A stretch of DNA of 63,055 nt, counting the filler, from Octopus bimaculoides (Eukaryota): the NCBI RefSeq assembly GCF_001194135.2. It is 4 parts of 4 records of this genome, joined end to end, with 100 filler letters (N's around TTAATTAATTAA, not from the genome) between each part and the next. Parts side by side here need not be neighbours in the genome. Positions count along the whole stretch, not along the records: positions 13,921 to 37,456 come from NC_068982.1; 3 more parts are not named here. One strand, 5' to 3'. Of this stretch, positions 13,821 to 34,893 are shown in pieces. Positions within the stretch are counted from its first letter, which is position 1; each line of letters opens with the position of its first letter. The notes beneath the pieces are model-generated. The model worked only from the letters and a program-made list of their open reading frames with translations. It had not been told where the DNA came from and ran no database searches. The position numbers were made by a program, and so were the translations under genes.

Positions 13821-13920
13821 NNNNNNNNNNNNNNNNNNNNNNNNNNNNNNNNNNNNNNNNNNNNTTAATTAATTAANNNNNNNNNNNNNNNNNNNNNNNN
13901 NNNNNNNNNNNNNNNNNNNN
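13821..13920. other. 100-nt assembly gap marker (44 N + TTAATTAATTAA + 44 N); also at 37457-37556 and 61051-61150
   Basis: Identical layout three times. The palindromic 12-mer puts a stop codon in all six frames. Confidence 0.95.
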
Positions 13921-14874: not shown

Positions 14875-17800
14875 AGTGAATGATTTGACGGCATTGGACT
14901 TGGTACCACATTCATTCAAATGCAACTAATCTGACTTTGCTTTTCACTCATTTGGAATATGTAAAATAAGTACCTGATTGTTTTGAATAACCTATCTCAC
15001 TCTACTACACAACTGGCCATGATTGTGGGAAAAGCACCTGAGAAATCATTCAGATTTGAAGTCATTTTGATAATTTTGTGGTAAAAGATTGTGGGATGTT
15101 CTGTAAAGGAAATGCAGCATTTAAAATGTTTATAGTTTGATGCTATACACATTGGAGTCATAGGTTAGGGAAGAGAAAAATAATTCTTAAATATTTTTAT
15201 ATATTTTTGCAAGTGATTTCTCTTCAAACTTTCAAAATGAATGTAATAGTTGGACATTGGTATATTCTTCAGTTCCTATGGAGAACTATGGGTTTTTTTT
15301 TTTTATCACAGTATTGATATACTCTAATTGATTCTTGTGACTTTTGTAGCTTACAAAATAGAACTGTGTTGCTGAAATGGGAACAATCATGCCAATCTAT
15401 TCAGTCATTTATGGTTTCTGTCCTAAGTAATATTGATGTTTGTGATATCTGACTTTTGGCTAGCCTGTGTCAAGTTATGTACTTAACTGATACATGTCAT
15501 GCCATTACCATACCACTTCACAGGCTGGTAAATTTTGGAATGTGTTTAGAATTTGTAGGTGCTTGTTGTAAAAGTAGTTGGTCAATATTTGATTTGACTG
15601 TCAACTGTATTGCTTTTTCGACTAAAGATATACAAATATTACACAGCTACAGTTCGTCACTCTGGCTATTGACCTACTATCAACACCTATTTCTATTTGA
15701 TTTTCTTCTCCCTTTATCATTTCTACATGAATATCTTCATTCTGTCTCCTCTCACTAATTCATCGCTATTTTCCCTCCCACATTAGCACTCTGGTCATTG
15801 AACATTGATAATCATTGGGTTATTACCCTTACTCTTCACATCTATTCTTACTGCTCTCCAATTTTATTTGTTTATAAATTCTTAAATTTTTTCCTCCTTC
15901 AAACAAAGGGTCATATCTGTAATGTCAGAATCCTTATCTTTGGCACAGCATACAAACTCCATCAAATATCTGAACTTTAAACAAATTTTGTTCATGCTGA
16001 TGACCACTAATTTTCTCTGAATCATGTTTTATACATCAAATAAAGTTTGCTGCTTGTATCATTTCCCTGAACTCTGAGAAAAGTATCTCTATTCATTGCC
16101 AATAGCGATGGACTGGTCACTGCCAGTAGCAATCAATTGGGCAGAATTCCTGTCAGCTTACAACAGCGAAAAATTTTTAGGCAATACTGAGGAATATGTT
16201 AGGAAGTGTGTAGTGGGTAACCAAGCAAGAATCTATGCTTATTTTATTGACAAGTTAGGGTTTGAATTCAATAGTCTCTGAACTGGTTACTCTAAATATC
16301 CAAGCCAAAATTTTACATTCTTGGCCATTTCCACTGTTCAATTATAGGCTAGTGTTCATTTGATGGTGAAGTACTCTCACTGTTGTACAAGATCAGTGAC
16401 AGCTTGAGGCTGAGTAGTATTTGAATTTGATGAGCTCCAGTGATACTTTAGTTATGTGAATGAAATTAAGCTGCATTGAATAGAAAAAAATCCTTCATTT
16501 CCTTCATGTAATTACATCACTGTTTCTTCAGAGCCAAAATATTGTTCAGCTTTGATAGTTAATCAATGAGATGTATTTATCCTTTGAATTGCTACTTAAT
16601 TCAGACTCCTTTACAATACTGTAAGAGTAGCATTCAGGGTTTCTCAAAACCCTAACCTAAATGAAGTGCAATTGATATAAATGGGAACTTGCATCACCTA
16701 AATATTTGCTTATCACTGTGTCAAATTAAATATTAATCTTAATTACTAAATACAGCTATTATTCATTTTAGGTGGGATTCATATTAATAGCTAAAACCAA
16801 CTTTCCATTTCAGCTCCAGACTGTTATTAGAAAACTTTCAAATTATTTAGCAAATGTTTGTCATCAGTCTTTTGGCTTATGTATGACATGGCTTTGTAGT
16901 AAGTTTGCTTCCTAATCCATTTGGTTCTGGGTTCAGTCCCAGGATCAACAAAAGACTTAGGTGGGGATTTGGTAAATGGGAATAACTGACAGAAGCCTGT
17001 GTGTGCCCTTGACATTGTTGGATATATGTAAATGTTTGTCACTGCTAAACAAACAATGTCATTCATTTCCAATATCCTGTGAGAACCTGTCACATCATAA
17101 GGAAATATTACCGTTCTTGGAAACAGGAAGGGCAACCAGTCACTGAAAATCTGCTTCAATTAATTCCATCCAACTGATGCAAGTATGGAAAAGTGGTCAG
17201 TAAAATGATGACACATTTAAGTCTGGTTTCAGAATATTGTCTTTGTTTTCCGTGCACTTAATAGAGAATATGAATATTTTGGTGCATTTTGTGTTAAATT
17301 AAATATTATTTAAAGTATATTTTTTATCCTATGAATGATTTATACAATAGCATATTAAGTACAGTGCAAATATTAACCCTGTGGAATTGGTACACAAATT
17401 CAACTTTGACTCCCTAATTTGTGTCAATTATTACACTTGAAGATCACATCATGTGTTCTTTTGATGTTCTCAGGTGAAATTAATGACAGACCTGCACTTT
17501 TAAACTACAGGCACTATCCAATTGATGGGGTTCAACAAAATTTCTGTCTATCCAATTACACTCAGAAGGCTTTGGTTGACATAATTTTATGATGGGACAC
17601 TTGCTTAAGATGCCATGCTGTGGGATAGAACCTTATATCTCGTGATTGTGAAGTAAACTCCTTTACTATCTAGCCATGCAGTATACTGTAATTTATCTAT
17701 TTCATTACCATATTCATTTTGAGATGCTCTGTGTTTCTTTCAATTAATTTTAAATATAAAAAAGAATTTAGTAAAATAACTTAGTTATCATTAAGTTAGT

Positions 17801-18039: not shown

Positions 18040-19070
18040 GGGTTGGCTTCACTCTTCTGTCGATATTGGTGTTGACTCTACTTTCGGTGTTGGTGCTGGC
18101 GTTTCATTTGTTGTTTCTTCTAATTATTCTTCTTTTTCTTTCAGTTTACATTCCGACCTGATGTGGCCCTTCAACCCGCAGTTAAAGCACCTTGGTTTTC
18201 TTCCTTCTACAAATACTATCAATTTTTCTTCTCTGCCTACATTTATGATTTCCGCAATCTCTTCAAGGGTTGTGACTTCTGCTTGAATTAGCATTGTCAA
18301 ACATTGTCCCTTCCAGTTCAACTCCTTTTCCACAGAGGCCTGGCGTATAGTTATTTTGTCCTCCAGGCCCATCGTGATAGCTGCCACTAAACAGGTGGCA
18401 TCAACTTCTGGAGGGATGTTGTTGACTTTCACCTTTGACGTTCTTCTTCCCATATATACGAGAAGAAGAACCACTTCCTCCATTGTGAGGGTCTCCGAGG
18501 AGTACATCTTGGCTGCTTCCTCTGACCTAAACCTCACTTTGATCGTTCCAAATCTTTTACCACGGTTAATGTACGTAATATCAGGCCAAATAGGTTTGAG
18601 GCATTTTTCCACAATTTTCTCCTCTGTTTTATATATCCTTTTTTTTCTTCCAATGTTGTAGGTTTTATACAAGATTCTCCTCTTGTTAACTATGTCAGTT
18701 GTTTCTTCTGGAGTGGCCACTTGAATTTCAGACCCCTCTTTTTTTAGTATTGACATGTATCTTTGCATTTCAAAAAAGTTTAATTCTCTCGGCGTCACTG
18801 CCAGTGAAATTCTTTCTTCCCCTGCTTCAGACACGGGTGAGTATGAAATTGGTGCAAGCAAAGAAGTTTCCATTTTTTTTTTCTCACAAAATTGGCTTAA
18901 AAAGCCACAAGATATAATAACAATGATTCCCCCACAGGTGGGAATTTCAACAAGCAGCTTCCAAAAAAGCAATCAACAATTCTTTTCAACAAAACAATAA
19001 CAACAACTCACCATAGTACTTCAATCAAACAAAACACAGAGAAAAGTAAAATGTACTAACAACAGGAGAC
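18040..19070 (-). mobile_element. ORF1/Gag-like element copy A1 (5' UTR plus ORF through CCHC knuckle, 3' end missing)
   Basis: ORF 18124-18972 contains RRILYKTY, KRFGTIKVRF, IPPEVD, WKG and VEGRKPRCFNCGLKGHIRSEC (CX2CX4HX4C). T/G-rich 5' leader. Boundaries approximate. Confidence 0.8.
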
Positions 19071-19074
19071 TTGT

Positions 19075-21101
19075 AAGAACGAATCGAGTTTCGTTGCTGG
19101 AGACACCACCCCCTAGAACTGATTATTTACAGTTGATAAAGATGGAAGTAACAGTGATTATAATTCTTTATTACCCAGGAGGGGCCGACAAAGAGGGACA
19201 GACAATTACATTGGGGACACATAAAAAATGTACAATTAAAATAAAATAAATAAAAACGTATGATATAATGAAAGATGGATAAATGTAAAGATGAAAATCG
19301 TGTTACCCGCCCCATGAGACAACACTTGCTTCCTTCCCTCTATACTTCATTATGTCCAACTCAAATCTCTCTATCAGTTCTTCAGACTGAACAAACTGTG
19401 GCAGGTTCCCCTTATCGAAGTCAACTTCCCACATTTCATAATCCACATTATGTCTCTCTATATCCATCCTTTGCTGTGCTGTTAATAGTAGCACCACACC
19501 TTTCACACCTTCTGCACCAACATGCAGCCTTTGCAAACAGGTCATCGTCATGAATTATACACGCAAAACATCCACTAGGGGGGAGGTAATTTTTGAGGCA
19601 TTGTCTGAATGTACTCTTTTCTTTTGTTTATGTGATGGAGGGGAATAGAAAGGCTTAGTGACTGCAGGGCGAGGGTGGGACAGAGAGGGTATGGGTGGGC
19701 CTTGGGTAGTTGTCAGGTGGAGTTGTGTGTGTATTGGACTTGCCTTTTTCCACTTCCTTCTCTTCTTCTGAAACCAATTCCTCCTCCTCCTGTTCTTCCC
19801 GGGGCCTCTCTTGTGTCTTCTCTTTAATGCTTTCTTCTTACACTTCCTCCACTCTTTTATCTGGTGGAGGGTGTATTTTTTCCACTCTTTTATCTGGTGG
19901 AAGGCATTTCGCTCTAATGTGGCCCTTCTGACCACATTTGAAACAGCGCGGTATCCTGCCCTCCACCCTTACATTCATTGCAACTTCATCCACAGTTATT
20001 GTTTCCACCATCTCTTCTATTGCCTCACTTGAACCTTGCACTATCATGTTTAATATTTAGCCTTTCCAATTTGCACTTTTCGTCTTAGTTGCCTGGAGCA
20101 CCACTATTTTTCCTTCAGTTTCAGCCAAGACAGCAGTCGCTATCCAGGCTACGTCAATTTCTGGTGGTATTCCTTCTACCCTTACCCGAGACGCTCTCTG
20201 TCCCAGGTACATGGGTAGGAGTACCAACACTTCATCCTTCAGTGGTGTTGCCTCGTGCTTCTTTGTCATGTTTTCGTTTTTGAATCTTACTTCAATTTCC
20301 CCAAATTTCGGTCCTCTGGCAAGATATGCTATTTCTTGCCAGATTGGCCTCAGCACCTTCTCCACTTGCTCTGTTGTCATAAGATCTATTTTCCTTTCCT
20401 TGATTGAATAAGTCTTGTACATTATTGTTCTTCTTTTTATCAGTTTTGTCGTTTCGAGCGGAGGGGTCACTTGTACGTTGTAACCGTCTCGACTCGACAA
20501 CTTCTTGTACTTCTCAATATCAATTACTACATTGTCATCTTCTTCTCAGGTGACACCTGCGAACCTTCTCATTTCCAACTCCTTATCCATAGCCTCAACA
20601 GACCTTAACAACTCCTCCTCGGATGACGACAACTCTGACCCGCTAAGGTCTGAGTAAAAGGAATTCCTTCTACTTTTATTAGCCATACTAACTCTCAAAG
20701 AGAGAAAGCACGGCTACACCGCTGCAGAGCAGCACACAACAAACAAAACAATCCTTCATCAAAACAAACCAACAGACAAAATAAACTTACACTTTTTTCG
20801 TTCAAAGACGGAAGTAACAGTGATTAACGGGAGGAAAATAACGATAATATTTCAATTTCTTGAGTTGTTAAAATGTATCCATGAAGTTTGAGTAAAAGTG
20901 AAAAACTGGATAAATGTAACCACCCGCCTTCGGGGGTTGAGTGGACATTGCGCCTCATTTTTCATCCTGCTTATTATCATTTTGTTTAAATTTCTTCTAC
21001 TATCATCATCCGATTTTATGTTTGTTGCGTTTTATATTGTCTTTGTTTTATGATGTCCTATAAAAACTCTTTGTATAGCCTTTTTGGGGTAACAAAGAAA
21101 T
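19075..21101 (+). mobile_element. Copy A2: 3' portion of a copy-C-type element (19075-19160 plus 20827-21101), split by insertion of copy B
   Basis: Removing B and one repeat copy restores LLETPPPRTDYLQLIKMEVTVINGRKITIIFQFLEL, colinear with copy C LVETPPPRTDYLQLLRTDVTMINGRKVTRVFEFFEL. The 3' UTR aligns with the reverse complement of 29692-29900. Confidence 0.82.
19161..20803 (-). mobile_element. ORF1/Gag-only non-LTR-type element copy B, apparently full length (about 1.64 kb), with in-frame stops
   Basis: ATG at 20686 (MANKSRR...). The same frame continues through ORFs 20057-20500 and 19838-20047 across single stop codons to CFKCGQKGHIRAKC. 3' end gggtaataaagaatta. Flanked by a 23-bp direct repeat AAAGA(T/C)GGAAGTAACAGTGATTA at 19138-19160 and 20804-20826. 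Confidence 0.85.
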
Positions 21102-21262
21102 CGGTATTTCGTCTCTTTTACGTTCTGAGTTCAAATTCTGCCGAGGTCGATTTATCCTTTCAGGGTCGATAAATTAAGTACCAGTTGTGTACTGGGGTCG
21201 ATGTAATTGACTGGTCCCATCCCCCAAAATTTCGGGCCTTGTACTTAAAGTAGAAAAGAATA
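21102..21262 (+). mobile_element. SINE family 1, 3' part only, starting at CGGTAT directly after copy A2
   Basis: cggtatttcgtc...gagttcaaattctgccgaggtcga...aaatttcgggccttgtacttaaagtagaaaag. Confidence 0.8.
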
Positions 21263-24200
21263 TTTTGTCTATTTTCAAGAGAAGTTGCTACTAGTCTTTG
21301 AACAGTCAGTTGTCAGTTTACATGGAAAGGAACAATGCAGTTATTAATAAAAGTTGAAATTAATGCATGCAAGGTTTCACAGATCTAGTATCACTCCTTC
21401 ATAGTCGGCCTATGAAATTTTCAGTCCATCCTCATATATGCACAGCCAGGGTTCACTTCTTTGTGCAGTTTTGGGTTCAATCCCACTGTGAGTGTCTTCT
21501 ACTGTAGCCTCGCACCAACTTATACTTTGTGAAGTAATTTTGTTGAAAGCAGCTGCAGGAAACTCATTGTGCGTGTGTGTGTGCAAAAAATATGACTGAC
21601 TGGTTAAATTCATGTCAATCATGAGGTCCTGGTTTTAGTACCACTGCGACATCTTGAGCATGTATTCTTCTATAACCTTGGGTTGACCCATGCCCTGTGA
21701 GTGAAATTGGGTAGACAGAAACTGTAAAAACCTGTCGGGTGGATTGTACCTATAATTGAGAGGGATAGTCTTGTTACTGTGCCATGTTGATTTTTTTTTT
21801 TTTGAAAATTACATTAATGGTACGTTGTGTCTGGAATGCTCAGCTACTTAGTTAATTCTGTTGGTAGAACAATTTAATCCTCGTTGAATGATAGCGGTCC
21901 GTCATCATGTGTGCATGCGAGTGTGCGCTAAAGTTGATATTCTACTCTTGTCACAAGGTGGTGTTGATGTTGGCATTCCTTGTTGATATGATGACCTGTT
22001 GCCCTGCGCTTTGGAAGACCTAGAACAAAACCATCCGTTACTTGAAAACAAGTTAGGGTTGGCGACAAGAAGAGCATCACGCAGTAAGATTGTTCCTCAA
22101 GCAACAAGCTAGATCTTTCTTCGTAGAAGCCATTAAATCTAATTTGTTTGCATAATACCAGTGCAATCTGAAATTGGAATGGTTGATCCCCTTCTATCCT
22201 ACTGTTATTTAGAGTGTTCTGATTTGATTTTCGATACAGAATGCCCTTAATTCTCATTCCACACATCAGCCCTTATCTCTGCACTCTAGCTCTGCCAGTC
22301 TGTACTAACTGTTTCTGGTTGCATATGTGCTTCACTCCTTACCTATCAAATTCCTAAGCGGGTAACCGAAACTATAATTGTAGGCATATCCATTTGCATT
22401 CGACATCACATACTCAGTGCTCCAAGTGGTTCACTCATAGTTGTGTTGTAGCATGCAGAAAGAGGAGATCTGCAAGAGCACTATTCGAGCCATGAAAGAT
22501 GACTTTGTATATCGAACAATGCTCCAAGTATACCACTTTCAAAAACTGCAGTCGATACTTTTGTCTCATTCCCATAAGAAGCAATTTCACTAACCTTGCG
22601 AACCATCGTTCTATCAGGTATGAAATGTTTTGGTTCCTGCCTATTTAATATCTCTTACTCAAAGCTAACTTGAGATCAGACGTTTTAGTGTTTCTCTCTT
22701 TCTCTTCTGCCTTCTCTTGAAAGCACGTGATTTAGTGGTTAAGGTATTCGTCCCACGATTGTAAGGTTGTGATTTCGATTCCTGGCAGCACGTATCCTTG
22801 AGCAAAACACTTTATTTCATATTCCTCTAGTCTACTCAGCTGGCAAAAATAAGTTGTACCCGTAAATTCAAAGGGCCAGCCTTGTTACATTCTGTGTCAC
22901 ACTGAATCTTACTGAGAACTACATTAAAGGTACACATGACTGTGGAATGCTTAGCTACTTGCACATTAATTTTTGCAAGCAGGCTATCCCTTGCAATAAC
23001 CAACAGTGCCAGTTTATATATATGAGCATAATTCTCTTTGTGTGTGTGTAAGAGGAAAGGGTAAAGTTTTTGTTAATCCTGTTCAGTTAATGAATTGTAA
23101 TGTCTGTTTGTCTGTCTCCCTCTCACTGTCTCTCTCTCCCTCTCTGTTTCTCTCACCTCCCCCCTGACTGTCTCTAAATTTCTGCATGTGTGTGTTTGAC
23201 TCTAGTACTAAAAAGTCTTGTCACCAAAGCAGGTTCAGTGCTCGGTTATCTGTTCCAAATCACCAACGTCCAAGCAGCTGCACTCGAACGTCTCATTCTG
23301 AATTTACGGCACAAACTTCTGGAGACAGTCATTGAAAACAACCTCCTCCGACACACTGAGTCTGCTTAATGATCACCCTCAGTATGGTGCTGAGTGCAGC
23401 ACCTCTGAGGATAGTTATGATACTGTATTCTGTTGAGTAATCAGTCTTTATTTTGTAAATCAAAGGATGTTTTCACTATTTCATCACTGTTTTTTGATGT
23501 GGCTACTTCACTTCAGTTACTACCAATTTTTTCAGAGCTATCTGAAACTTTAATCGAAATTTATCCAAAAAAGTTTTGTTTTATCCTATAGTCTTATCAT
23601 AAATATGTCACCGTTATAAATCTATTGATTATGGTAGAGTTGCACATATAATAGAAATTATCTAAATTTCCTTGAGCAGTCGTTTGAAGTCAAAAAGGAA
23701 GCATGGGAAATAACTTGTATATGATTGAAATTTTTGGACAATATAGTCATTGCAAAGCGGAGCGGATCTGGTCTTTAAAAACAGCTGATGAAAGCATGGG
23801 ACTTGTTTAGTGAAGCGTATTCTATTTATCAAAACTAAGAGTTAGTAGCAGTTATTGGCAAACCCTAGCCTGCGAGACTTGTTGGGTGGCACCTCTAAGT
23901 AAAAATTACCTTTAATTTTCTAGTCATGCGGTTCACCTGATGATGAGTCATGTCTCATGCGGCCCACTCCTTGAAAAAAATTGCTCGTGCCTGATTTATA
24001 GGAACACTAATTATAGATATTAACAACGTAGCAGAAGGAAAATATCTCAGGTTAGCGTTTTACATATGTAATATAGGGAGCTGAGAAATTTAATTGAACA
24101 GAACGTTCCTCTAACCACAAGTATAAACCAGAATGCATTTTGCCAATAAAAGCCAATATGAGAGTTTCTCTCATGGTATCCACGGTAGCAGTTTGTTGTA

Positions 24201-24363
24201 ACAGAACCTCCATGTTTGAAGGGGATAAATATTACCTGTCTGAGTCAATTTGATCCTCTAAATCCTTGAAGGTGTTGCCCCCGTATGACCGCAGTCCGAA
24301 ACCAATTAAATAACTCCGCTAGTTGTATTACACCACGTGTAATTATAACTGCTCGCAGTATAG

Positions 24364-24807
24364 CCGCGGGAGTGGCTGTGTGGTAAGTAGCTTGCTTACC
24401 AACCACATGGTACCGGGTTCAGTTCCACTGTGTGGTAAGTAGCTTGCTTACCAACCACATGGTACCGGGTTCAGTTCCACTGTGTGGCACCTTGGGCAAG
24501 TGTCTTCAAAATTAGCCACGGGCCGACCAAAGCCTTGTGAGTGGATTTGGTAGACGAAAGCTGAAAGAAGACCGGTGTATATATATATATATATATTTAT
24601 TTATGTGCGTGTATGTTTGTCCTCCCCAACATCGCTTGGCAACTGGTGCGGTTGCGTCCCCGTAACTTAGCGGTTCGGCAAAAATAGACTGATAAAATAA
24701 GTATTAGGCTTACAAAGAATAAGTTATGGGGTCGATTTGCTCGACTAAAGGTGGTACTCCAGCATGGCCGCAGTCAAATGACTGAAACAAGTAAAAGAAT
24801 AAAAGAG
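24364..24807 (+). mobile_element. SINE family 2 copy with a 52-bp tandem duplication in its head
   Basis: tgtgtggtaagtagcttgcttaccaaccacatggtaccgggttcagttccac occurs twice in tandem. Confidence 0.8.
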
Positions 24808-26129
24808 CCCCCAAACCACATATTTAGAGGGGTGGAAGGAACATTGATNNNNNNNNNNNNNNNNNNNNNNNNNNNNNNNNNNNNNNNNNNNNNNNNNNNN
24901 NNNNNNNNNNNNNNNNGACTCAGTACTTGATTGCTATGGATTTTATCCAGAGGACTAAGTCTGTGTACTTTGAAAACTAGTTTCAAGCAGCGCTCTTCGT
25001 TCGTGAAGACAACGCGCGCACACGCACACACACACACACACACACACAATGCGCATCGAGATGGAATCGAGAACAAAGGAATTGCGAAACGAACTTGTTA
25101 ATCGTACATTTTATCGACTCTTGAGATGTGAAAAAGAAGTTTGACTTCTGCATTTGGACTCGAAACGTAAAAGAATATTGTAAAAAAATCTCACTCTTAG
25201 TCTGCTCTCTCGCTCTTCATTGACGAGACAAGAGATCACCGATTCTTTTTTAAAAATAATTAGATATGAAGTATCGTACGAAGGGAGATAAAAATACTAA
25301 CCATAGAAAAATGCTTCTATTTCAAGGGACATAACTCTGAGAAATATTTACCGTCACATTTTAGCGTTTAACCCATTACCTACCAGTGATCTCATGTGAG
25401 ATCACTTAAAAATTACAAATTTCGTAATTATCTGTCAATATTTACACATATCTAACCTTTTTACTAAGATCGGAANNNNNNNNNNTTATGCTAGAAATCA
25501 AAGTTTCATAAAAAAATTCCAGTTAATAGAATTATGGGAGGTAATGGGTTAAGCTATACGAAACTATGTTTCTGTTTAAGAACGTAGAAATTTTCCCTCG
25601 TCTAATTTTGAGTTAAATGTTTATAAAAAAAATCTTGGATAATATACTGGATGCTTAAGACACCTTATTTTAAGTAGCAACTTTATGGCATGTATCTCTT
25701 TTTGAATTTTTGGGTGAAGCACATACACAGTCATTGTACACCTTGGTTTCTCCGTGGAGAAAGAAAAAAAAAAAACTTAGACCAGCTAAAGTAAGTTTGG
25801 AATGATAGTTGTAGTGGGAAAGGTATAGCAAAAGATGTTGAGGTTGCAGATGAAATAGGCATGTGGACGACGTCAAAGTAAAACAATGGGAAAACATCGG
25901 ATTGTAGTTTAAATAATTTATTTCACTACATCACATTACCAACTTACTTCGAGCTGGAGAAGAAGAAATTAACAGGGTAAATACTGTGTCGAAATGATGA
26001 GGTAAAACCGGACATGTTTTGTGTCTGTGTGCGTGTTGGTTATTCGGTGGTGTCTGTTTATGTTCTGCGACTGTTATTGTGTTGGATTGTTCAGGTTGAA
26101 TATCTGGATCTGTGTTACCTGCTTAACTG

Positions 26130-29100
26130 GCGAAGTTACTTGCTGGCCCTCTCGTGGCTATCTCTCCATTCTACATGATCTCCCATAAACTGTCCCAATG
26201 AACTGAATCGAAAGCTTTGGTGGCATTTTTACCTTCACGGAAGCCTGCTTGTTCAGGTCTGAGCTTCTAATCAATACTATTTTGGATCCTGTTATGATCC
26301 TTCTTAGCACTCCACTTGCTATAGGGCTTTCCTATAAGTAGGTTATCTCCCTTGGCTAGGCGACGCTCCATGTAGATAATTAAACTTCCGGAGGCTAACC
26401 CACGCCATTGTTATTGTTTTACGTCTTATCATGGATATAAAACAGCTTGATGATTCAGCTATCGAAGTACTTACTGTGCCTGAGTTAAAGAAATATTTAA
26501 GATTATATGGACAGTATGTTACTGGAAGAAAGGNNNNNNNNNNNNNNNNNNNNNNNNNNNNNNNNNNNNNNNNNNNNNNNNNNNNNNNNNNNNNNNNNNN
26601 NNNNNNNNNNNNNNNNNNNNNNNNNNNNNNNNNNNNNNNNNNNNNNNNNNNNNNNNNNNNNNNNNNNNNNNNNNNNNNNNNNNNNNNNNNNNNNNNNNNN
26701 NNNNNNNNNNNNNNNNNNNNNNNNNNNNNNNNNNNNNNNNNNNNNNNNNNNNNNNNNNNTCTAAAGATCTTTGTAAGTTGCCGAATTTCACAGATAATGA
26801 CATAATTACCTCGTGCTACGGATGAAAGCAAAGCAACAGTTAAGGAGTGGCATATTTTACCACGACAGACACGTACACAGCATCGAATACCACGATGTGA
26901 GTGAAAGCTGCTCTCACTGTATTGTCCGGTGTCTGGTAATCCCTTCGATACCGACATCAAACCAAAAAAAGAATCCTGACCACAGAGTGTGGGTAATTAT
27001 GTCAAATGTCACTGGCAATGTGCATTCAGCTGATTGCAACTGTTAAAGCAAGTCACTGAGCATGCGTACATGTCATACGGGAGAGTTCCAATCAGGGGTG
27101 GATAACACCTTATAGGAAAGCCCTATAGGTAGAAGTGTTATTCCCCTCCAGTTTCCACATTCAGATAGATCGCCTTCGTTTGGTAACTTGACAAGCAGTT
27201 CTTTCTTCCAGTCATGAGCTATTTTCTCTTGATCTCAAATATCATTTATAATACTCTGCAGTTTGTCTGAGGGTGTTTCAATGTCTGCCTTCAATAACTC
27301 CGGTGTTACCATGTTAACTCCTCCTGCCTTTCCATTTTTTAATTTTCTGATTACATTCTTGCTTTCTGTTTTGCTTGCAGGGCTGGTGTCAATGGTCCCA
27401 CCTCTGGAATTACAATATTTTCAATTTCCACTGGATTGGGTGGGGTGTCTCTATTTAATAACTATTCAACTTCTTCAAAATGTTCTATCCATCTTGTCTT
27501 TTCCCCTTGTCATCTGTTATGATTTTATCCTGTTTATTCTTGATACCACCTGATGCTTGATATGGTTTTTCATTACATATTGTTCTGGTTATTTCATATA
27601 GTGTTTTCATTTGACCATTCTTAGCTGCTCTTCCAGCATCGTTTGCTAAGTCCCTTACCCATTTACGCTTGTCTGATCTTATACCTGATTTGACATGTCT
27701 TTGGCTTTGTATTCCATTTGTTTAATTCTGATGGACTTGGCATTTTCAATTTTAATGTTTTCTCTCTTTAACTTTTTTCCAAGAGTCTGGTCCTACTTAC
27801 GGTTTTTGATTCTTTTTCTTTACACCAAGTACTTTGGCTGCCTGGTTGAATGCTCTATCGAAGTTTTTCCATTTCCTTTCTATGTCAATATCTTCTGGAA
27901 TCGTCCCAAGTAAAGCGAATTTATTCTTCCGTTCCATAATGAACTTGTCTTTGTTTGATTTTGTAGTTTGCCAGTATCATATTTTGTTCTTGGGTTTGTC
28001 TGTCTTGTACAGGTGTCTCCGAAGTTTCAGCTTCACTTGTGACCTTAAAAGCTGATGATCACTTGCAACATCAGCGCCTCTCATGACCCGAGTGTCTTTT
28101 ATTGATGAGCGGTATTTACATTTGACGTGTGTGTGATCAATTTTGATTTGTTGTTCTTTTATCTGGAGAGGTCCAGGTGTTTTGTGAATGTCCTTGTGGC
28201 GGAATGTAGTTCCAGTAATGACGACATCATTCATCCCTGCTATTACTGTTCGTAATTCCTGTTCCATGTTTACCCATTATTCTCTCATTCCCCTTATTAT
28301 TTGCTCCAACCTTGGTATTCATATCTCCAGTTACTATGACCATACCATGTGTGTGCACAGTCTCAACTAGTTTGCAGCTGTTCATAGGTGTCTTTCACCA
28401 CATCCTCTGCGTCCGTTGCAGATGCATAGTTTAATGAATTTGGAATAAAATCTGGCTGTGATGAATCTCTCATTCACCAGTTTCCATTCCATGAGTGCCG
28501 ATTCAGCAGCTCTGGTCATCATAAAAGCTACTCCATTGCGGTGTATCTTGTCTTCCCTGCCAGAATAGATGACAGTTTCACCTGTGCTTAGTTTCATTTT
28601 ACCAAAACCAGTCCATTTACCCTCACTAATTCCTAGAACATCGATGTTGTATGTCTTCATGACTTTAGCAACTTGAGCAGTTTTCCCGATCACACACATT
28701 ATTTTGACATTCCAATTGCCAATATTTAAGTTTTTTTTTTGGTTTTGCAATTGACTTTTTCGGTCGTTGGGTTTCCTTGCTGCTTTGGCCCAACAACGTC
28801 ATTGTGCTCTGGTCTTCTTAGAATCTGATGTTATCGTCATCTGGTACGTGTCAAGTCACAATTTCGAAGCCTGGTTTCGTGTTGTATGAACTTTCTCTCT
28901 GAGCGCTTCTGGTTTTTGTAATAAGTGTTTAAAAAAATTTTTTTTTACGAGAATGGGTTATTAGCTCATTGCTCAACCACTAACCTGGAGGACCAGTGGA
29001 CTATTTTTTGTCTGACTTCTACCCGTCGACCTTACCGCCTTGGGTGACCCAACCAGGAGTACAAGACTCCGGACGGCATGGCTCTACAGGTAATTGAAGC

Positions 29101-29145
29101 ATGCAGACACCCCTACCAACGTTAAGGTGATAGCCCACGGGGGTG
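26130..29145 (-). mobile_element. Degenerate RTE-clade LINE (5' UTR, AP endonuclease, start of RT), internally deleted and split by a DNA transposon
   Basis: NIGNWNV...DVLGISE...GVAFMM (28382-28750), TTFRHKDIHK...GADVASDHQLL (27977-28267), KNGKAGG...ECGNWRGITLLP (27130-27350). On the other side of the insertion: LRPEQAGFREG and KAFDSVHWDSLW (26180-26300). Left boundary approximate. Confidence 0.85.
26319..27128 (+). mobile_element. Small TIR DNA transposon derivative carrying a SAP-like and SWIM-like ORF remnant
   Basis: Perfect 20-bp inverted repeat CTATAGGGCTTTCCTATAAG (26319-26338 / 27109-27128, including the duplicated target). Internal LTVPELKKYLRLYGQYVTGRK (SAP-like) and RVWVIMSNVTGNVHSADCNC (SWIM-like start). 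226-N gap inside. Confidence 0.72.
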
Positions 29146-29691
29146 AACGAATCCACTCCAGTAGTTATTTTTAAAAAGCCTTGTGCTTATTCTATCGGTG
29201 TCTTTCACCGAATCACTGACATTATCAATAGAATGCGGTACTTATCAATAGAAGCTGCGGTACTTCGTCCAGGGAACACTCCTTTATAGTCGTGTGGAAA
29301 TGACGAGCGGAAATGACCACGCAATATCGATATCTCTCACTTTTTTCACTTCTGGGGCGATTTCGTTTCGCCTAGCTTTGGGGTATGCCATATTTTTAAG
29401 TACAATATTTTAAAGGGATCTTGCCCGGACGAAGTATCGCAACTTCACATTGTTTAATTATGCACATACATTAAATATGTCGTATTGACAATGTTTACAA
29501 TATTTAAACTTCTTCAGACACAAATTCCTGTCTACTATAGGCACAAAGCCTGAAATTCAGGAGGAGGGGGCCAATCGACTATATTGGCCCCGGCGCACAA
29601 CTGGAATTTAGTTCACCAACCCCGAAAAGATGAAAGGAAAGTCGACCTCGGCGGAATTTGAACTAAGACCGTAAAGATGGACGAAATACCG

Positions 29692-31716
29692 ATTTCTTTA
29701 TTACTCATAAAGGGCTATACAAAGAATTTTTAAGACATCACAAAACATAAAGACAGTACAAAACACCAACATAAAGTCGGGGTAATTAAAATAAAATGAT
29801 AATATGCAAGAATGAAAAAAAAATGAGGCGCAATGTCCACTCGATCCCCGAAGTCGGGTGGCTACATTTATCCAGTTTTTCACTTTTACGTTCAACATCA
29901 TGTAAACATTTTAACGGTTTTGTAACTCAAAAAATTCAAACACTCGCGTTACCTTTCTTCCATTAATCATTGTTACGTCCGTCCTTAACAACTGCAAATA
30001 ATCAGTTCTAGGGGGTGGTGTCTCCACCAACCATATCCATTTCGTTATTATATTTTCACCAAGTTCTTCTATGCGCTCCCAGCAGCTTTCCTCGCGTATC
30101 AAAATGCATTTTTCAGCACATTTCTCTGGCATTTTCACTCTTATTATTTCTCCCAACCTCTCGACTTTTTTCTCCATCTGCTCGCAATTCTCGTACTTTA
30201 TCAAAACCCCCTTGTATTTCACATCTTTATCCGTTCTCTCCTCCTCTTCTTGTACATTATTAGTTTCTGGCTTTTTTTTTTATCTCTGTTTTGTTTTCTG
30301 TTGACCGTTCCTTTGACTTATTTTTCCTTCGCTTTTTAGGGTTAGTAGCCCCATTTTCGTTCTTCTCTTTTGTTTTCTCTGTTTCACACTTCTGTATCTC
30401 TTTTATTTCCTCAGTGTGGTCTACAAGTCTTTCCTCCTGTGTTTGTACTTTCTCTTGCTGTGTGAACTCATATAGGGGGCATTTGGTCTTCATATGACCT
30501 CTTTCCCCGCATATGTAACAGTTTGGTTTCCTTCCCTCGACTACAACATTTAATGTTCTCTCATCCTCCACTTCTATCTGGTAGGGAATTCTTTCTATGT
30601 CCTCGAATGTGGCAAAAAACCACATTTCGAGTCCAAATCCCCACCATTTGCACACTTTTGATTTCGCCACTGGTCCCAATTCCGGCTCCTCCTTGGTTGC
30701 AGCCAGCACTGTTGCAACCAACCACTCTGGTTTAATTTCTGGTGTAACTCTGGGAATCCGTATTTTCACACTTCTCTATAACTTGGGAGCAATGCTATTT
30801 TTGCACTTCTTAAAATGTTGGTCGCATGCTTGATTGCCTCTTCTATAGTGGCGAACCTCACCTCAACCGTACCAAACTTTCTTCTTCTGTTGACAATTTC
30901 ACCCAGGCACTCCTCGATTTCCTCTTCCGTCACCATTTCAATTTTACCGGTTTCGACAGCATGTGTACGATACACTACTGTCCTCAGAATTTTCTTTTCT
31001 TTGGATCTTTGTGATTTGACGGGCAACACTTGTTTTCTTAACGAAACACTTTCAAACTTGGGACACTGGTAGAATGTGTCATACAAAACAACTTTTTCTC
31101 TTAACCTTCTTAACAAAAAATTGTACATCGCAAGTTATTTCATGTTAAAGTTGTCGTATTTCTGTAATTTCAACCAATCATTGACGTCTATTCAGCTGAA
31201 TACAGTCAGTGCTGGCCGGTCATAAANNNNNNNNNNNNNNNNNNNNNNNNNNNNNNNNNNNNNNNNNNNNNNNNNNNNNNNNNNNNNNNNNNNNNNNNNN
31301 NNNNNNNNNNNNNNNNNNNNNNNNNNNNNNNNNNNNNNNNNNNNNNNNNNNNNNNNNNNNNNNNNNNNNNNNNNNNNNNNNNNNNNNNNNNNNNNNNNNN
31401 NNNNNNNNNNNNNNNNNTGCTATTTCTGGGGGACACAATTTGTATGAGTCTCCCTCAACTTCTATCAAATTCCTGCTTCTGGTCACCTCCTCCATATCCA
31501 ACTTGATTAACTTGGTTTCTAGCGGCACTGGCTTCCTCACCGCAGTGGCTTTGGCGTAGCTTTCCATACTGGAGACACTACCACTTGCCATAGCTGGGAA
31601 AAATGCAGCAGCTCACGTGAAATGCAACCGTAATAATTCCACAAAATCACAATTATTTACCGAGACAGTTTTCACAAAGTAACACAACAGTATTCACAAT
31701 AATTCACAGAGCCGTT
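29692..31716 (-). mobile_element. ORF1/Gag-only non-LTR-type element copy C, apparently full length (about 2.0 kb including a 210-N gap and an inserted repeat), inserted in a SINE
   Basis: ORF pieces 31220-31591 (MASGSVSSMESYAKA...), 30766-31040, 30260-30769 (VEGRKPNCYICGERGHMKTKC) and 29911-30222. 3' end gagtaataaagaaat. ATACCG duplicated at 29686-29691 and 31717-31722, with the two SINE halves continuing on either side. Confidence 0.85.
31038..31226. mobile_element. Fragment of the same MITE family inserted in the ORF of copy C
   Basis: aacgaaacactttcaaacttgggacactggtagaatgtgtcat...ttcaaccaatca aligns with 33335-33495. Confidence 0.7.
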
Positions 31717-32445
31717 ATACCGCGAAGCAGTTCGACCGGCGTGCTAACGATTCTGCCGGGTCGCCGCCTAACGCTTCAGACGTAAATTCTGATTTTGTGC
31801 GACGTGTTTGCATATCAGCAAATAGCTTTTACGCTTTCTGTATGTATACATCCAGCTGGATCAGTAGTGGCAGAGCGACACTAAAAAGCAGAAATAACTG
31901 AGGAATATTGATATCTGCCATTATCTTTCACTTCTGAGGAGATTTCGTTTCGCCTGATTTTGAGATATGCTCTTTTTTTAAACACAGTACTTCATTAAAG
32001 GGATCTTCTCGAATAAAGAAATATATATTTATCTAGGTATTACTGAAATTGGAACCGGGAGAAACGATTTTGCATTATTTTCAAATTATAAAAATATCAA
32101 ACTACTTAATATTTTTTTATTATTTATTTATTTTATTTATTTATTTATGTGTTTCAGCCAAGTGGCTGCGGTCATGCTGGTGCATGTTGTACTGAACATT
32201 CTTATATGTTGATTTCTAACGTAGGTATTAGACCTCACTTGGGAGAAGGGTATAATGTATTAAATCAATCTAGTACTAGGCTGGTACTTACTTTATCGAC
32301 TCAAAAAGGATAAGACAAAGCTGACCTTGGTGGAATTTGAACTAAGAACTTAAGTAATCGTAATCGAATAGCAAAAGTCATTTGTCTGACGCTCCAAAAT
32401 TTCTGTTAACCCATTGCCCCGGATCTAATACATATATTGCCATCA

Positions 32446-32634
<189 letters not shown>

Positions 32635-33299
32635 CTATGGCGAAACGTCTTATGACATGTTTCATTATTGCAAACCATATTGCTGTGGTTATAGATTATT
32701 ATTATTCAGAGTGGGCCAAAAGTCACGCACAAAATAAGTTCAATACGCTTCGGAATTGTCAAAGACGCTTCAATTTTTCTAAAATTAAATAAATAAAATG
32801 ATGAATACATATGTACATTATGAACAAAATGAATAATAATAATTTCAAATGTTTGGCACAAGGCCGCCAATTTGGTGGTGGAGGGGTTAAGTCGATTACA
32901 TCAACCCCAGTGCTCAACTGGTACTTATTTTATCGATCTCGAAAGGATGAAAGGTAAAGTCGACTTCAGTGGAATTGACTTTGCCGTTTATCCTTTCGAT
33001 AATAATAATAAAAACAATGACATAACACGACAAATGCCTTGGCGCATGATTTTTGACCCAAATTGTATAATATCTTTATATGCATTTATAAGATTAAGAA
33101 CTTAATCTTAAAATAATGCCAAAATGAGTATAGTAAATAATAAGAAGGTACTTCAAATGATTAGCAAAACACTCACTCACCAACATGCTACAATTTTCAC
33201 GGATGTGCTCTTCTCGCTACCTTTTCTACGGATACTACTGTGCCTTCTGCTCCCCTGAATATGTAGCATAAACGACACCTCTAACCTAACGCAACCATC

Positions 33300-33899
33300 G
33301 AATCTTTTTTAAAACGGGGGCCACATTTTTCATTAACGAAACACTTTGAAACTTGGAACACTGGTAGAATGTGTCATATAAAACATCTTTTTCTCTTAGT
33401 CTTCTTAAAAAAAAAAAGAAATCCCTAAGTTATTCCATGTTAAAGTTGTCGTATTTCTGTAATTTCAACCAATCACTGACGTCCATTCAGCCGATATACA
33501 TTAAGTGCCGATTACATAAACAAACGATTCTGAAACAATTCTATCGGTGATAGGGTTAGGGTTAGGGTAAAACAGCAAATTTAAAAAGAAAAAAACAAAT
33601 AAAACGAAGAAAAAAAAAAGAAAATGAAAAAAGCAAATTTAAAATGAAAAAAGCAAATAAAACGAAGCTATGGCTTAATCAGCCAAAGGAGTAAATATAA
33701 ACAACTGAATACTTGTCAGTGATTGGTTGAAATTATCGAAATAAGACAATTTTTTACATGAAATAAATTCGAATACAAAAATATTTTTCTGTTCTATAAC
33801 ACAAAATAGATAAGTATACGAAGTTTGAAAGTCTTTCCGTACCAAAAACACTACGTAAAACATTAATGAAAAATGTGGCCCCCGTTTTAAAAAAGATCC
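33300..33899. mobile_element. 600-bp MITE with 37-bp TIRs and 8-bp TSD in the ZNF474-like intron
   Basis: Perfect 35-bp inverted repeat 33302-33336 / 33863-33897, extended by 2 bp with one mismatch. CAACCATC duplicated at 33292-33299 and 33900-33907. A related internal segment lies inside copy C at about 31038-31226. Confidence 0.85.
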
Positions 33900-34566
33900 C
33901 AACCATCTCCTCCTTTTTCATTATCACTATCAGTTTTTACTTGCCAGATTAAATTCTTCCTTTTGCTCAGAACTGTAACTCTAAGGAACCCCACTCCCGT
34001 ACAACTTGATACTTAATCCCATCTCATCAATGATCGAATAAAACTATGTACAAAGTCGTTGCAGCTTTGACCGCAAAGCTTGAAGTTTCTGAGGGAACTA
34101 GTCGATTTCATCGACCTCAGTGTTCAACTGGTACATATGTTTATCAATTTAGAAAAGATGACGGTCAAAATCGACCTCGGCAGAATTTGAGCTCAGAACA
34201 TAAAGACGGAAAAAATGCTGCTAAGCATTTTTCCTGATGTGCTAACGATTCTGTCAGCTCGCCGCCTTGTTAATAATAGTAATTTCAAATTTTGCCACAA
34301 GGACAGCAATTTTGGGGGAGGAGATGAGTCGATTACATCGACTCTAGTGTGTAACTGGTACTTAATTTATCGATCACGAAAAGATGAAAGGCAAAGTCGA
34401 TCTCGGCCGAATGTGAACTCAGAACGTAGCGGCAGACGAAATACTGCTAAGCATTTCGCCCGGCGTGCGAACGTTTCTGCCAGCTTGCTAAGCATTTCGC
34501 CCGGCGTGCGAACGATTCTGCCAGCTAGTTTTAATAAAATATCCCAATAAAATCCCTAGAAGCTCA

Positions 34567-34893
<327 letters not shown>

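What the first reader, a model, noticed from the sequence alone, without database searches (positions are those of the whole stretch)
18040..31716. Family of ORF1/Gag-only non-LTR retroelements with no RT or endonuclease (HAL1-like) in a probable octopus genome
Seen: three strongly diverged minus-strand ORFs (A1 18124-18972, B 20686 to about 19300, C 31591 to 29911) share the motifs R-x-x-Y-(K/R)-T-(Y/H), FG-x-(I/V)-x-VRF, (I/T)PE(V/I), W-x-G and VEGR-x-P followed by a single CX2CX4HX4C knuckle (CFNCGLKGHIRSEC, CFKCGQKGHIRAKC, CYICGERGHMKTKC). All have T/G-rich leaders. B (about 1.64 kb) and C (about 2.0 kb) are closed on both sides by direct repeats, so there is no room for an ORF2. Established: a central RNA-binding region plus CCHC knuckle is the layout of ORF1 proteins of L1/Tx1-type LINEs, and ORF1-only non-autonomous elements (HAL1, half-L1) are known in mammals. 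Inference: this is a diversified non-autonomous retrotransposon family that keeps its own RNA chaperone and borrows RT/EN in trans. I do not know whether it has been described in cephalopods. No autonomous L1/Tx1 partner is visible in this window.
Basis: partly seen in the sequence, partly recalled or inferred. Interest (0 to 1): 0.88.

Follow-up and report, generated by a model that had tools for sequence, protein, structure and literature searches.

The report
ORF1-only LINE derivatives in octopus
The octopus sequence carries short retrotransposons that keep only the RNA-binding first gene of an L1/Tx1-like LINE plus that LINE's 3' end and have lost the reverse transcriptase, an invertebrate counterpart of mammalian HAL1 that looks real but is not a new kind of element.

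Summary

- **The three ORFs.** Three diverged minus-strand ORFs, A, B and C, are homologous. Each is predicted to have two RRM-like domains followed by one CCHC knuckle.
- **B (19161-20803, 1643 bp).** It is bounded by a 23-nt target-site duplication, and an uninterrupted paralogous "empty site" lies at 29964-29986.
- **C (29692-31716).** It sits inside a tRNA-derived SINE, flanked by a duplicated CGGTAT. The N gap at 31227-31417 lies inside a MITE-like insertion that breaks C's ORF.
- **No ORF2.** Neither B nor C contains any EN/RT sequence.
- **Autonomous relatives.** The closest homologues in O. vulgaris, O. sinensis and Argonauta are the ORF1s of full LINEs. The one ORF2 scanned against Pfam carries Exo_endo_phos, RVT_1 and zf-RVT.
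- **Shared tail.** These LINEs and the ORF1-only elements share a roughly 40-nt 3' tail (…GGCCCCTTGTGGGTAATAAAGAAAT). None has a poly(A) run.
- **Other ORF2-less copies.** Independent TSD-flanked copies exist in O. sinensis (463-aa ORF intact), O. vulgaris (389-aa ORF intact) and O. bimaculoides (0.9-kb internal-deletion copy).

Caveats:
- A has no defined 3' end and groups with autonomous-LINE ORF1s.
- B and C are themselves dead copies.
- Whether ORF2 was lost once or repeatedly is unresolved.
- Genome-wide copy counts and Repbase/Dfam could not be checked.

The parts
19161..20803 (-). Element B: a complete ORF1-only retroelement of 1643 bp. It has a 117-nt G/T-rich 5' UTR, a degraded ORF1 and a 3' UTR ending ...GGCCCCTCCTGGGTAATAAAGAATTA.
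   Evidence: No similarity to ORF2.
19850..20686 (-). B ORF1 core: N-terminal region, two RRM-like domains and the knuckle CFKCGQKGHIRAKC. It carries two in-frame stops.
20804..20826 (.). B target-site duplication, copy on the element's 5' side (23 nt).
19138..19160 (.). B target-site duplication, copy on the element's 3' side (23 nt, one mismatch).
   Evidence: The unduplicated paralogous site lies at 29964-29986.
29692..31716 (-). Element C: an ORF1-only retroelement of 2025 bp as assembled, including a foreign insert and an N gap. It ends ...AGCCCTTTATGAGTAATAAAGAAAT.
   Evidence: No similarity to ORF2.
31418..31591 (-). C ORF1 N-terminus (MASGSVSSMESYAKATAV...CPPEIA). It closely matches (single-residue differences only) the start of the O. 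bimaculoides proteins P0010 and P0152.
31005..31417 (.). MITE-like insertion that interrupts C's ORF. It contains the assembly gap 31227-31417.
30260..31004 (-). C ORF1 core: the RRM-like region and the knuckle CYICGERGHMKTKC. There is a frameshift at about 30769.
29911..30222 (-). C ORF1 C-terminal domain (...KCILIREESCWERIEELGENI...TDVTMINGRKV...). It matches the C-terminus of the O. bimaculoides protein P0154.
31717..31722 (.). C target-site duplication CGGTAT, copy on the 5' side. It forms the end of the SINE head.
29686..29691 (.). C target-site duplication CGGTAT, copy on the 3' side. It forms the start of the SINE body.
29520..29685 (-). 3' part of the tRNA-derived SINE into which C inserted. 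The SINE head is at 31723-31773. The SINE has its own 8-nt TSD, GTCTGAAG, at 31781-31774 and 29519-29512.
19074..21101 (+). R: a 5'-truncated second copy of a C-type element (end of the ORF1 C-terminal domain, 3' UTR and tail GGGGTAACAAAGAAAT). It is split by the insertion of B and is followed at 21102-21270 by the same SINE segment as C.
18124..19073 (-). A: a 200-nt G/T-rich leader plus an intact ORF1 that stops 7 aa after the knuckle. It has no C-terminal domain, no tail, no TSD, and no ORF2 down to the edge of the piece.
   Evidence: It groups with full-LINE ORF1s.

Best explanation
B and C, and the truncated copy R, are non-autonomous derivatives of an octopod L1/Tx1-like LINE lineage.

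**What they retain.** Each keeps the LINE's G/T-rich 5' leader and the whole first reading frame. That frame encodes an N-terminal region, two RRM-like domains, one CCHC knuckle, a charged linker and a C-terminal domain. Each also keeps the last ~40 nt of the LINE's 3' end: a pyrimidine-rich stretch, a small hairpin (GCCC-CTTGT-GGGT) and AATAAAGAAAT. ORF2 (endonuclease, RT, zinc finger) is missing completely.

**Likely mechanism (inferred).** The element is transcribed from its own leader. Its ORF1 protein, where still intact, coats the RNA. The ORF2 protein of an autonomous relative then recognises the shared 3' tail and copies the RNA into a nicked target by target-primed reverse transcription. 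This leaves 13-23-nt target-site duplications and no poly(A) tail. The abundant tRNA-derived SINE of the same genomes carries a related tail and probably uses the same enzyme.

**Status of each step.**
- Shown: the homology, the element boundaries, the absence of ORF2, the shared tail, and independent ORF2-less insertions in three species.
- Inferred: mobilisation in trans, recognition of the tail, and any role for the element's own ORF1 protein.
For: **The proteins are LINE ORF1 proteins.**
- The closest protein, P0001 (O. vulgaris), is 49% identical to A. It is the ORF1 of a LINE whose 1132-aa ORF2 has Exo_endo_phos, RVT_1 and zf-RVT.
- The same ORF1-then-ORF2 layout is seen in L002 (three copies), L003, L005 and L008, the last from Argonauta.
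- An AlphaFold model (pLDDT 74) shows two beta-alpha-beta-beta-alpha-beta units. Foldseek matches it to tandem-RRM proteins such as NONO/SFPQ, U2AF65 and IMP3 RRM12, with E = 1e-5 to 1e-4. Pfam finds zf-CCHC.

**B and C are bounded and lack ORF2.**
- B has a 23-nt TSD and an empty-site paralogue.
- C splits a SINE and duplicates CGGTAT.
- blastx of the whole piece against the LINE ORF2 finds nothing.

**The tail is shared.**
- GGCCCCT..TGGGTAA occurs at the end of the ORF1-only element and of each of the three full LINEs in L002: 4 matches against 0.14 expected.
- The alignment of ten 3' ends is.
- The hairpin is paired in 94.6% of cells. It flips from CC/GG to GG/CC in the SINE-type tails.

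**Other TSD-flanked ORF2-less copies.**
- L002 2495-4185 has a perfect 16-nt TSD and an intact 463-aa ORF.
- L006 ~6927-8653 has a TSD of about 15 nt and an intact 389-aa ORF.
- L004 ~7776-8668 has a 13-nt TSD and is an internal-deletion copy.

**The ORF2-less layout was copied.**
- C and R are about 75% identical and share the same order: ORF1 C-terminus, 3' UTR, tail.
- Several O. bimaculoides gene models are C-type. The one that reaches the C-terminus (P0154) ends as C does, and none runs on into EN/RT-like sequence.

**Purifying selection on ORF1.** pN/pS is 0.54 and 0.38 with synonymous sites saturated.
Against: - No genome-wide count of ORF2-less against ORF2-bearing copies per subfamily could be made.
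- B has stops and a frameshift. C has a MITE insertion and a frameshift. Both are dead copies.
- C's TSD is only 6 nt.
- No autonomous LINE with a B-type or C-type ORF1 was recovered. P0008 may be one, but its locus could not be fetched.
- ORF1-only copies do not form a clade, and the deep nodes of the tree have under 40% support.
- The L004 copy shows that random internal deletions are also mobilised, so some ORF2-less copies may be one-offs.
- The hairpin covariation rests on essentially one event.
- Mobilisation in trans is inferred, not tested.
Confidence: 0.8

Rival explanations
1. One-off dead-on-arrival deletion products. On this reading each ORF2-less copy arose independently from a full-length LINE RNA or DNA by internal deletion, template switching or splicing. 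None ever served as a source of further copies, so there is no ORF1-only family.
For: - The ORF1-only copies are interleaved with full-LINE ORF1s in the tree.
- L004 is an irregular internal deletion that removes part of ORF1 and still has a TSD.
- HAL1 itself is reported to have arisen several times (PMC5753468).
- ORF2 was lost repeatedly in Drosophila telomeric elements (PMC13534243).
Against: - C and R are two diverged copies (~75% identity) with the same ORF1-end/3'UTR/tail arrangement.
- Several O. bimaculoides C-type gene models exist; the one that reaches the C-terminus (P0154) ends as C does.
- Two ORF2-less copies in other species keep long intact ORFs of 463 and 389 aa. That is unexpected for random debris.
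Confidence: 0.15
2. LTR-retrotransposon Gag remnants or solo structures, with the flanking direct repeats being LTRs.
For: - A CCHC knuckle is also typical of retroviral-type Gag.
- Direct repeats of 70-120 nt flank C at 29306-29422 / 31887-32007 and at 29625-29674 / 32304-32353.
Against: - Those repeats are 72-80% identical copies of the dispersed SINE and of another repeat found throughout 32-36 kb.
- The real boundaries are a 23-nt TSD for B and a 6-nt TSD for C.
- Homologues lie upstream of APE+RT ORF2s, not of PR-RT-IN.
- The fold is tandem RRM, not capsid.
Confidence: 0.01
3. Host genes or domesticated ORF1 genes rather than mobile elements. This applies especially to A, which is intact.
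For: - A's ORF is intact, with no recognisable element ends.
- Homologues are annotated as genes in octopus genomes.
- L007 (O. sinensis) is an ORF1 homologue with a degenerate knuckle, no tail, and three annotated isoforms.
Against: - B and C have TSDs, a LINE tail and disabling mutations.
- A lies 87 bp from B in a pile of nested repeats. It is 54% identical to an active-looking LINE ORF1 and groups with it.
- No orthologous intact copy or expression data were examined.
Confidence: 0.04

Closest known systems
HAL1 (half-L1) of mammals
   Same: A non-autonomous derivative of a LINE that encodes only ORF1p and depends on the parent's ORF2p. It is reported to have originated several times (PMC5753468).
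   Different: - HAL1 derives from mammalian L1, which by general knowledge has a coiled-coil/RRM/CTD ORF1p and poly(A)-dependent priming.
- The octopus elements have a two-RRM plus CCHC ORF1p.
- Their parent is an invertebrate L1/Tx1-like LINE.
- They end in a specific ~40-nt tail with no poly(A).
- A related tail is found on a tRNA-derived SINE.
HeT-A and other ORF1-only telomeric Jockey-clade elements of Drosophila
   Same: - They are Gag/ORF1-only non-LTR elements with CCHC knuckles that rely on the ORF2 of related elements.
- ORF2 was lost repeatedly, and ORF1-only lineages can give rise to new ORF1-only lineages.
- They occur in head-to-tail arrays (PMC13534243). One octopus ORF1-only copy (L002) sits directly upstream of a head-to-tail array of full LINEs.
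   Different: - They belong to a different LINE clade (Jockey) and insert specifically at telomeres.
- The octopus copies are interstitial. The loci lie tens of Mb inside chromosomes.
- The octopus copies show ordinary TSDs at unrelated target sequences.
L1/Tx1-group LINEs with an RRM + CCHC ORF1p
   Same: - ORF1p has RRM-like domains followed by a zinc knuckle.
- ORF2p has an APE endonuclease, RT and a C-terminal zinc-binding motif (zf-RVT).
- L1-Tx1 families are reported as recently active in O. vulgaris (PMC13282606).
   Different: - The window elements lack ORF2.
- The RT was not placed phylogenetically, so L1 versus Tx1 is not decided.
- No target-sequence specificity was seen among four TSDs. 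The exception is the identical SINE junction shared by C and R.
LINE/SINE pairs with a shared 3' tail ('stringent' recognition, e.g. UnaL2/UnaSINE1)
   Same: A non-autonomous partner carries the LINE's 3'-terminal tens of nucleotides, including a small hairpin, and has no poly(A) dependence. This is established knowledge of that system. Here the tail is shared by the LINE, the ORF1-only elements and, in a variant form, the SINE.
   Different: - The non-autonomous partner here is protein-coding.
- Recognition of the tail by the RT has not been tested.

Membership tests
ORF1-only non-autonomous LINE derivative (HAL1-like, in the functional sense) | Encodes a protein homologous to the ORF1p of an autonomous LINE | tested here: met
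   A, B and C match L001 ORF1 with E = 3e-70, 1e-44 and 2e-22. That ORF1 is followed by an EN+RT ORF2.
ORF1-only non-autonomous LINE derivative (HAL1-like, in the functional sense) | No endonuclease or reverse transcriptase within the element's own boundaries | tested here: met
   B is 1643 bp and C is 2025 bp between their TSDs. blastx against ORF2 finds nothing anywhere in the piece. For A the 3' boundary is undefined.
ORF1-only non-autonomous LINE derivative (HAL1-like, in the functional sense) | Shares the 3' end of the autonomous partner | tested here: met
   The last ~40 nt align with the tails of full LINEs in L001, L002 and L003. A has no tail.
ORF1-only non-autonomous LINE derivative (HAL1-like, in the functional sense) | Inserted by retrotransposition in the ORF2-less form (TSDs at the ends of the short element) | tested here: met
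   - B: 23-nt TSD plus an empty site.
- L002 copy: 16 nt, perfect.
- L006 copy: ~15 nt.
- L004 copy: 13 nt.
- C: only 6 nt, but it splits a SINE cleanly.
ORF1-only non-autonomous LINE derivative (HAL1-like, in the functional sense) | Amplified as a family: many copies sharing the same ORF2-less junction | tested here: inconclusive
   C and R share the junction, and several C-type gene models exist. No genome-wide search was possible with these tools.
HAL1 proper (Repbase HAL1/HAL1B) | Derived from mammalian L1, with poly(A)-type 3' end | tested here: not met
   The host is an octopod. The ORF1p has two RRMs plus a CCHC knuckle. The elements end in AATAAAGAAAT directly at the TSD, with no A-run.
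L1/Tx1-group LINE ORF1p of the RRM + CCHC type | RRM fold followed by a CCHC zinc knuckle | tested here: met
   The model has pLDDT 74 and tandem-RRM Foldseek hits with probability 1.0. zf-CCHC scores above the Pfam cut-off for A and C and just below it for B.
L1/Tx1-group LINE | The partner's RT falls within the L1 or Tx1 clade in an RT phylogeny | not tested
   Only the domain architecture was examined: Exo_endo_phos + RVT_1 + zf-RVT. No reference RT set was available.
LTR retrotransposon Gag | Flanking LTRs and an associated pol gene | tested here: not met
   The flanking repeats are TSDs and SINE copies. Homologues are linked to an APE-RT ORF2.
Catalogued repeat family (Repbase/Dfam) | A matching consensus already deposited | not testable with these tools
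   No Repbase or Dfam library was on hand. Literature searches found no description of ORF1-only LINEs in cephalopods.

The most novel reading that the evidence does not exclude
Octopods may harbour a long-lived three-tier retrotransposition system built around one 3' tail with a small hairpin.
- The first tier is autonomous L1/Tx1-like LINEs.
- The second tier is several ORF1-only lineages that persist as coding parasites of those LINEs, with ORF1 kept under selection.
- The third tier is the dominant tRNA-derived SINEs, which use a covarying version of the same tail.

Composite elements may also form. C and R carry the same SINE segment after their own tail. This suggests that a C-type element which landed in a SINE was later copied through to the SINE's tail.
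Probability: 0.3. Interest if true: 0.6.

Novelty: new member of a known kind. Interest (0 to 1): 0.45.

Why it matters
- **For the ORF1-only idea.** ORF1-only LINE derivatives are well documented in mammals (HAL1) and in Drosophila telomeres. Finding TSD-bounded, partly intact examples in octopods, in a different LINE group with a different ORF1 architecture, suggests that loss of ORF2 with retention of ORF1 is a recurrent outcome of LINE evolution.
- **For experiments.** These elements offer a system in which the contribution of a cis-encoded ORF1 protein to mobilisation in trans could be tested.
- **For octopus genome annotation.** These ORFs are currently annotated as ordinary genes, for example 'EPM2A-interacting 1-like' and 'CCHC-type domain-containing protein'.
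- **For the SINE expansion.** The shared tail points to the LINE group that may drive the very large SINE expansion in octopus.

Tried and rejected
1. **LTR hypothesis.** Rejected. The long 'direct repeats' around C are diverged SINE and other repeat copies.
2. **The EN-like ORFs at 28750..27977 as C's missing ORF2.** Rejected.
   - C ends at 29692 with its own tail.
   - The EN/RT remnant at about 28800->27000 has no blastx similarity to the L1/Tx1-like ORF2.
   - By eye it looks RTE-like.
3. **Search for A's 3' end.** No tail motif was found with up to 3 mismatches. No k-mer is shared between A's 5' flank and its downstream region. There is no homology to LINE 3' regions.
4. **Homology of the C-terminal domains.** I tried to show that the domains of B and the L002 copy are specifically related, which would argue for a common ORF1-only ancestor. 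blastx hits were dominated by low-complexity K/E/P-rich linkers, so the result is inconclusive.
5. **dN/dS.** Synonymous sites are saturated (pS at least 0.75), so only pN/pS could be given.
6. **Word-indexed protein searches with alignments.** These saturated at 8000 candidates and returned few hits.
7. **Exact-protein look-ups.** Look-ups for A, P0154 and P0008 found no contig. As a result the window's own record and a possible B-type autonomous LINE could not be fetched.
8. **Bao & Jurka 2010 on HAL1.** The paper is not held.
9. **Target-sequence specificity.** The four clear TSDs share no motif. Only the C and R junction with the SINE is identical.


Full report
**What is in the window**

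The piece 13921-37456 is AT-rich (32-41% GC) and full of repeats. Three minus-strand reading frames stand out.
- A (18972..18124) is intact.
- B runs from the ATG at 20686 in one frame to about 19850. It has two in-frame stops, and its C-terminal part is frameshifted.
- C starts at 31591, is interrupted, resumes at about 31004, shifts frame near 30769 and continues to 29911.

A against C gives E = 2e-24. Pfam recognises only zf-CCHC. The leaders are 63-72% G+T against 49% for the whole piece.

**Boundaries of B and C**

*B.* Self-comparison shows a 23-nt direct repeat at 20826-20804 and 19160-19138, spaced 1666 nt apart. The DNA on either side of B (19074-19160 and 20804-21270) is colinear, in inverted orientation, with an uninterrupted stretch at 29516-30050. 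That stretch carries the 23-mer only once, at 29964-29986. This is an empty-site control inside the same window. B (19161-20803, 1643 bp) is a discrete insertion with a 23-nt target-site duplication.

*C.* The sequence upstream of 31716 is the head of the abundant tRNA-derived SINE and ends ...GCTTCGCGGTAT. The sequence downstream of 29692 continues the same SINE: CGGTATTTCGTCC...GTTCAAATTCCGCCGAGGTCGAC. Intact SINE copies at 34267-34152 and 34481-34353 read straight through this point. C (31716->29692) therefore inserted into a SINE and duplicated at least CGGTAT. The SINE has its own 8-nt TSD.

*R.* The stretch that supplied B's empty site is the 3' part of C itself. Consequently 19074-21101 on the plus strand is a second, 5'-truncated, C-type copy. 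I call it R, and B jumped into it.

**The assembly gaps**

Only 31227-31417 lies inside an element. Intact C-type proteins from O. bimaculoides read ...CPPKETKE(N/D)KILRT.... In the window, 31005-31417 separates CPPEIA from KEKKILRT. Positions 31019-31212 are about 88% identical to the left part of a 596-bp element at 33302-33897 that has 35-nt terminal inverted repeats. The gap therefore sits inside a MITE-like insertion. The two sides are not continuous coding sequence and C's ORF is broken. The junction that matters, from ORF1 end to 3' UTR to tail, is gap-free.

**What the proteins are**

A word-indexed search found only two close relatives, both from Octopus. Fetching their loci was decisive.
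- In O. vulgaris (L001), the homologue (49% identical to A) is the first ORF of a LINE present as three head-to-tail copies. Its ORF2 is 1132 aa and has Exo_endo_phos, RVT_1 and zf-RVT.
- In O. sinensis (L002) there are three more full copies.
- A Logan contig (L003) runs from ORF1 into the start of the endonuclease.
- L005 (O. sinensis) and L008 (Argonauta hians) are also ORF1+ORF2 elements.

A profile search of 1.8 billion representative proteins gave 1329 hits at E <= 1e-3. The named ones among those checked are all from Octopoda.

An AlphaFold model of A (pLDDT 74) has two beta-alpha-beta-beta-alpha-beta units before the knuckle. Foldseek matches it to tandem-RRM proteins. These are LINE ORF1 proteins of the RRM + CCHC type, and the autonomous relatives have an L1/Tx1-like architecture. 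L1-Tx1 families are listed as recently active in O. vulgaris (PMC13282606).

**No ORF2, but the LINE's tail**

blastx of the whole piece against the LINE's ORF2 finds nothing. Yet B ends ...TTGTCTGTCCCTCTTTGTCGGCCCCTCCTGGGTAATAAAGAATTA, directly at its TSD. C ends ...AGCCCTTTATGAGTAATAAAGAAAT. The full LINEs end ...TTGTCCCCTCTTTGTTGGCCCCTTGTGGGTAATAAAGAAAT.

No copy has a poly(A) run. Within the tail a 4-bp hairpin (G CCC / CTTGT / GGG T) is paired in 94.6% of cells across 14 tails. In the SINE tails, and in one ORF1-only element, both central pairs are flipped from CC/GG to GG/CC. This is essentially one compensatory event, so it is suggestive only.

**Other ORF2-less copies**

- L002 2495-4185 (O. 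sinensis) has a perfect 16-nt TSD, GGATGTGATATAATGA, an intact 463-aa ORF and the same tail. It lies directly upstream of, and in the same orientation as, the array of full LINEs.
- L006 ~6927-8653 (O. vulgaris) has a TSD of about 15 nt, an intact 389-aa ORF and a tail intermediate between the LINE and SINE versions.
- L004 ~7776-8668 (O. bimaculoides) is a 0.9-kb copy with a 13-nt TSD that has lost the end of ORF1 as well.
- L007 has an ORF1 homologue without ORF2 and without recognisable ends.

Among the loci I could inspect there were nine full elements at five loci, five bounded ORF2-less elements, and two unbounded ones (A and L007).

**Is it a family?**

Evidence that the ORF2-less form was itself copied:
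- C and R are about 75% identical and share the same ORF1-end/3'UTR/tail layout.
- Several O. bimaculoides gene models are C-type. The one that reaches the C-terminus (P0154) ends as C does, and none runs on into EN/RT-like sequence.
- Two copies in other species keep long intact ORFs.
- ORF1 has evolved under constraint: pN/pS is 0.54 and 0.38 with saturated synonymous sites.

Evidence against a single diversifying lineage comes from a neighbour-joining tree of ORF1 cores.
- A groups with the full LINEs of L001/L002 (93%).
- B groups with P0008 and the L004 copy (92%).
- C groups with P0005 (100%).
- The other ORF1-only copies fall elsewhere, and the deep nodes are unsupported.

Repeated loss of ORF2 is at least as likely as one ancient loss. 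This is what is reported for HAL1 (PMC5753468) and for Drosophila telomeric elements (PMC13534243). A cannot be called a bounded ORF1-only element, because it lacks the C-terminal domain, the tail and a TSD.

**Mechanism**

*Shown:* homology to LINE ORF1, the element boundaries, absence of ORF2, the shared 3' tail, and TSDs of 13-23 nt at unrelated targets.

*Inferred from established LINE biology:* transcription from the leader; coating of the RNA by the element's own ORF1 protein where intact; recognition of the tail by the ORF2 protein of an autonomous relative; and target-primed reverse transcription starting at the tail rather than on poly(A).

The identical junction of C and R with the same SINE position is best explained as follows. 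A C-type element inserted into a SINE and was later copied with read-through to the SINE's own, related tail. Site-specific insertion is the alternative. Two copies cannot decide between them.

**Comparison and verdict**

Functionally these elements work like HAL1 and like HeT-A-type ORF1-only elements. They are not members of either family. The host, the LINE clade and the ORF1 architecture differ from both, and the poly(A)-less tail also differs from HAL1.

I found no description of ORF1-only LINEs in cephalopods. Repbase and Dfam could not be consulted.

The finding is a new member of a known kind and of moderate interest.

Noticed in passing
window 33302-33897; second, partial copy at 31005-31417: A 596-bp MITE-like element with perfect 35-nt terminal inverted repeats (ATCTTTTTTAAAACGGGGGCCACATTTTTCATTAA). 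It contains internal (TTAGGG)-like and A-rich repeats. A copy about 88% identical has inserted into C's ORF, and the assembly gap lies inside that copy.
   Followed up: partly
window ~27000-28800, minus strand: A degraded LINE fragment with an APE-type endonuclease (NIGNWNV..., weak Exo_endo_phos hit) and the start of an RT (KNGKAGGVNMVTPELLK...NWRGITLL). It has several frameshifts. By eye it looks RTE-like, and it has no blastx similarity to the L1/Tx1-like ORF2. It runs into the gap at 26534-26759.
   Followed up: partly
window 21102-21270, 29520-29691 + 31723-31773, 32240-32400, 32830-33010, 34080-34540, 35100-35330, 35790-35990, 36080-36300; L004 ~13838-13882: Many diverged copies of a tRNA-derived SINE. 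Its 3' tail (AGGCCTTGTGCCTATAGTAGAAA) resembles the LINE tail. It keeps the same small hairpin through two flipped base pairs. The tail of the ORF1-only element in L006 is intermediate between the two. This may identify the LINE group that mobilises the octopus SINEs.
   Followed up: partly
L001 4300-19400 and L002 4250-20850: Full-length LINEs stand in head-to-tail arrays with a period of about 5.3 kb. Each tail is followed within ~100 nt by the next leader, which contains an A-run of 8-30 nt. In L002 an ORF1-only element sits directly upstream of the array, in the same orientation. L003 also begins with the tail of a preceding copy. The arrays are interstitial, not telomeric.
   Followed up: no
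proteins P0001, P0023, P0152, P0119, P0022, P0093, P0106: Octopus gene models annotate these ORF1 sequences as host proteins, for example 'EPM2A-interacting 1-like'. Some models fuse them to unrelated exons or to each other. P0023 joins a C-type N-terminus to a B-type C-terminus. P0022, P0093, P0106 and P0119 carry an ORF1 fragment inside longer proteins.
   Followed up: no
L007 6001-6846 (O. sinensis CM016886.1): An ORF1 homologue with a degenerate knuckle (KFHLCLEPGHIKKNC). It has no ORF2 within 6 kb and no recognisable tail or TSD. It is annotated with three isoform accessions. It could be a decayed copy or a domesticated gene.
   Followed up: partly
window 24376-24479: A perfect tandem duplication of a 52-nt unit (CTGTGTGGTAAGTAGCTTGCTTACCAACCACATGGTACCGGGTTCAGTTCCA). 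The unit looks like part of another tRNA-related repeat, and similar sequence occurs at 17541-17663.
   Followed up: no
window 34564-34833 (minus) and 14047-14874 (plus): An 89-aa ORF with a clear zf-C2HC_2 (PF13913) match (E = 2e-9), and a 275-aa ORF with no Pfam match. They could be host exons or chance ORFs among the repeats.
   Followed up: no
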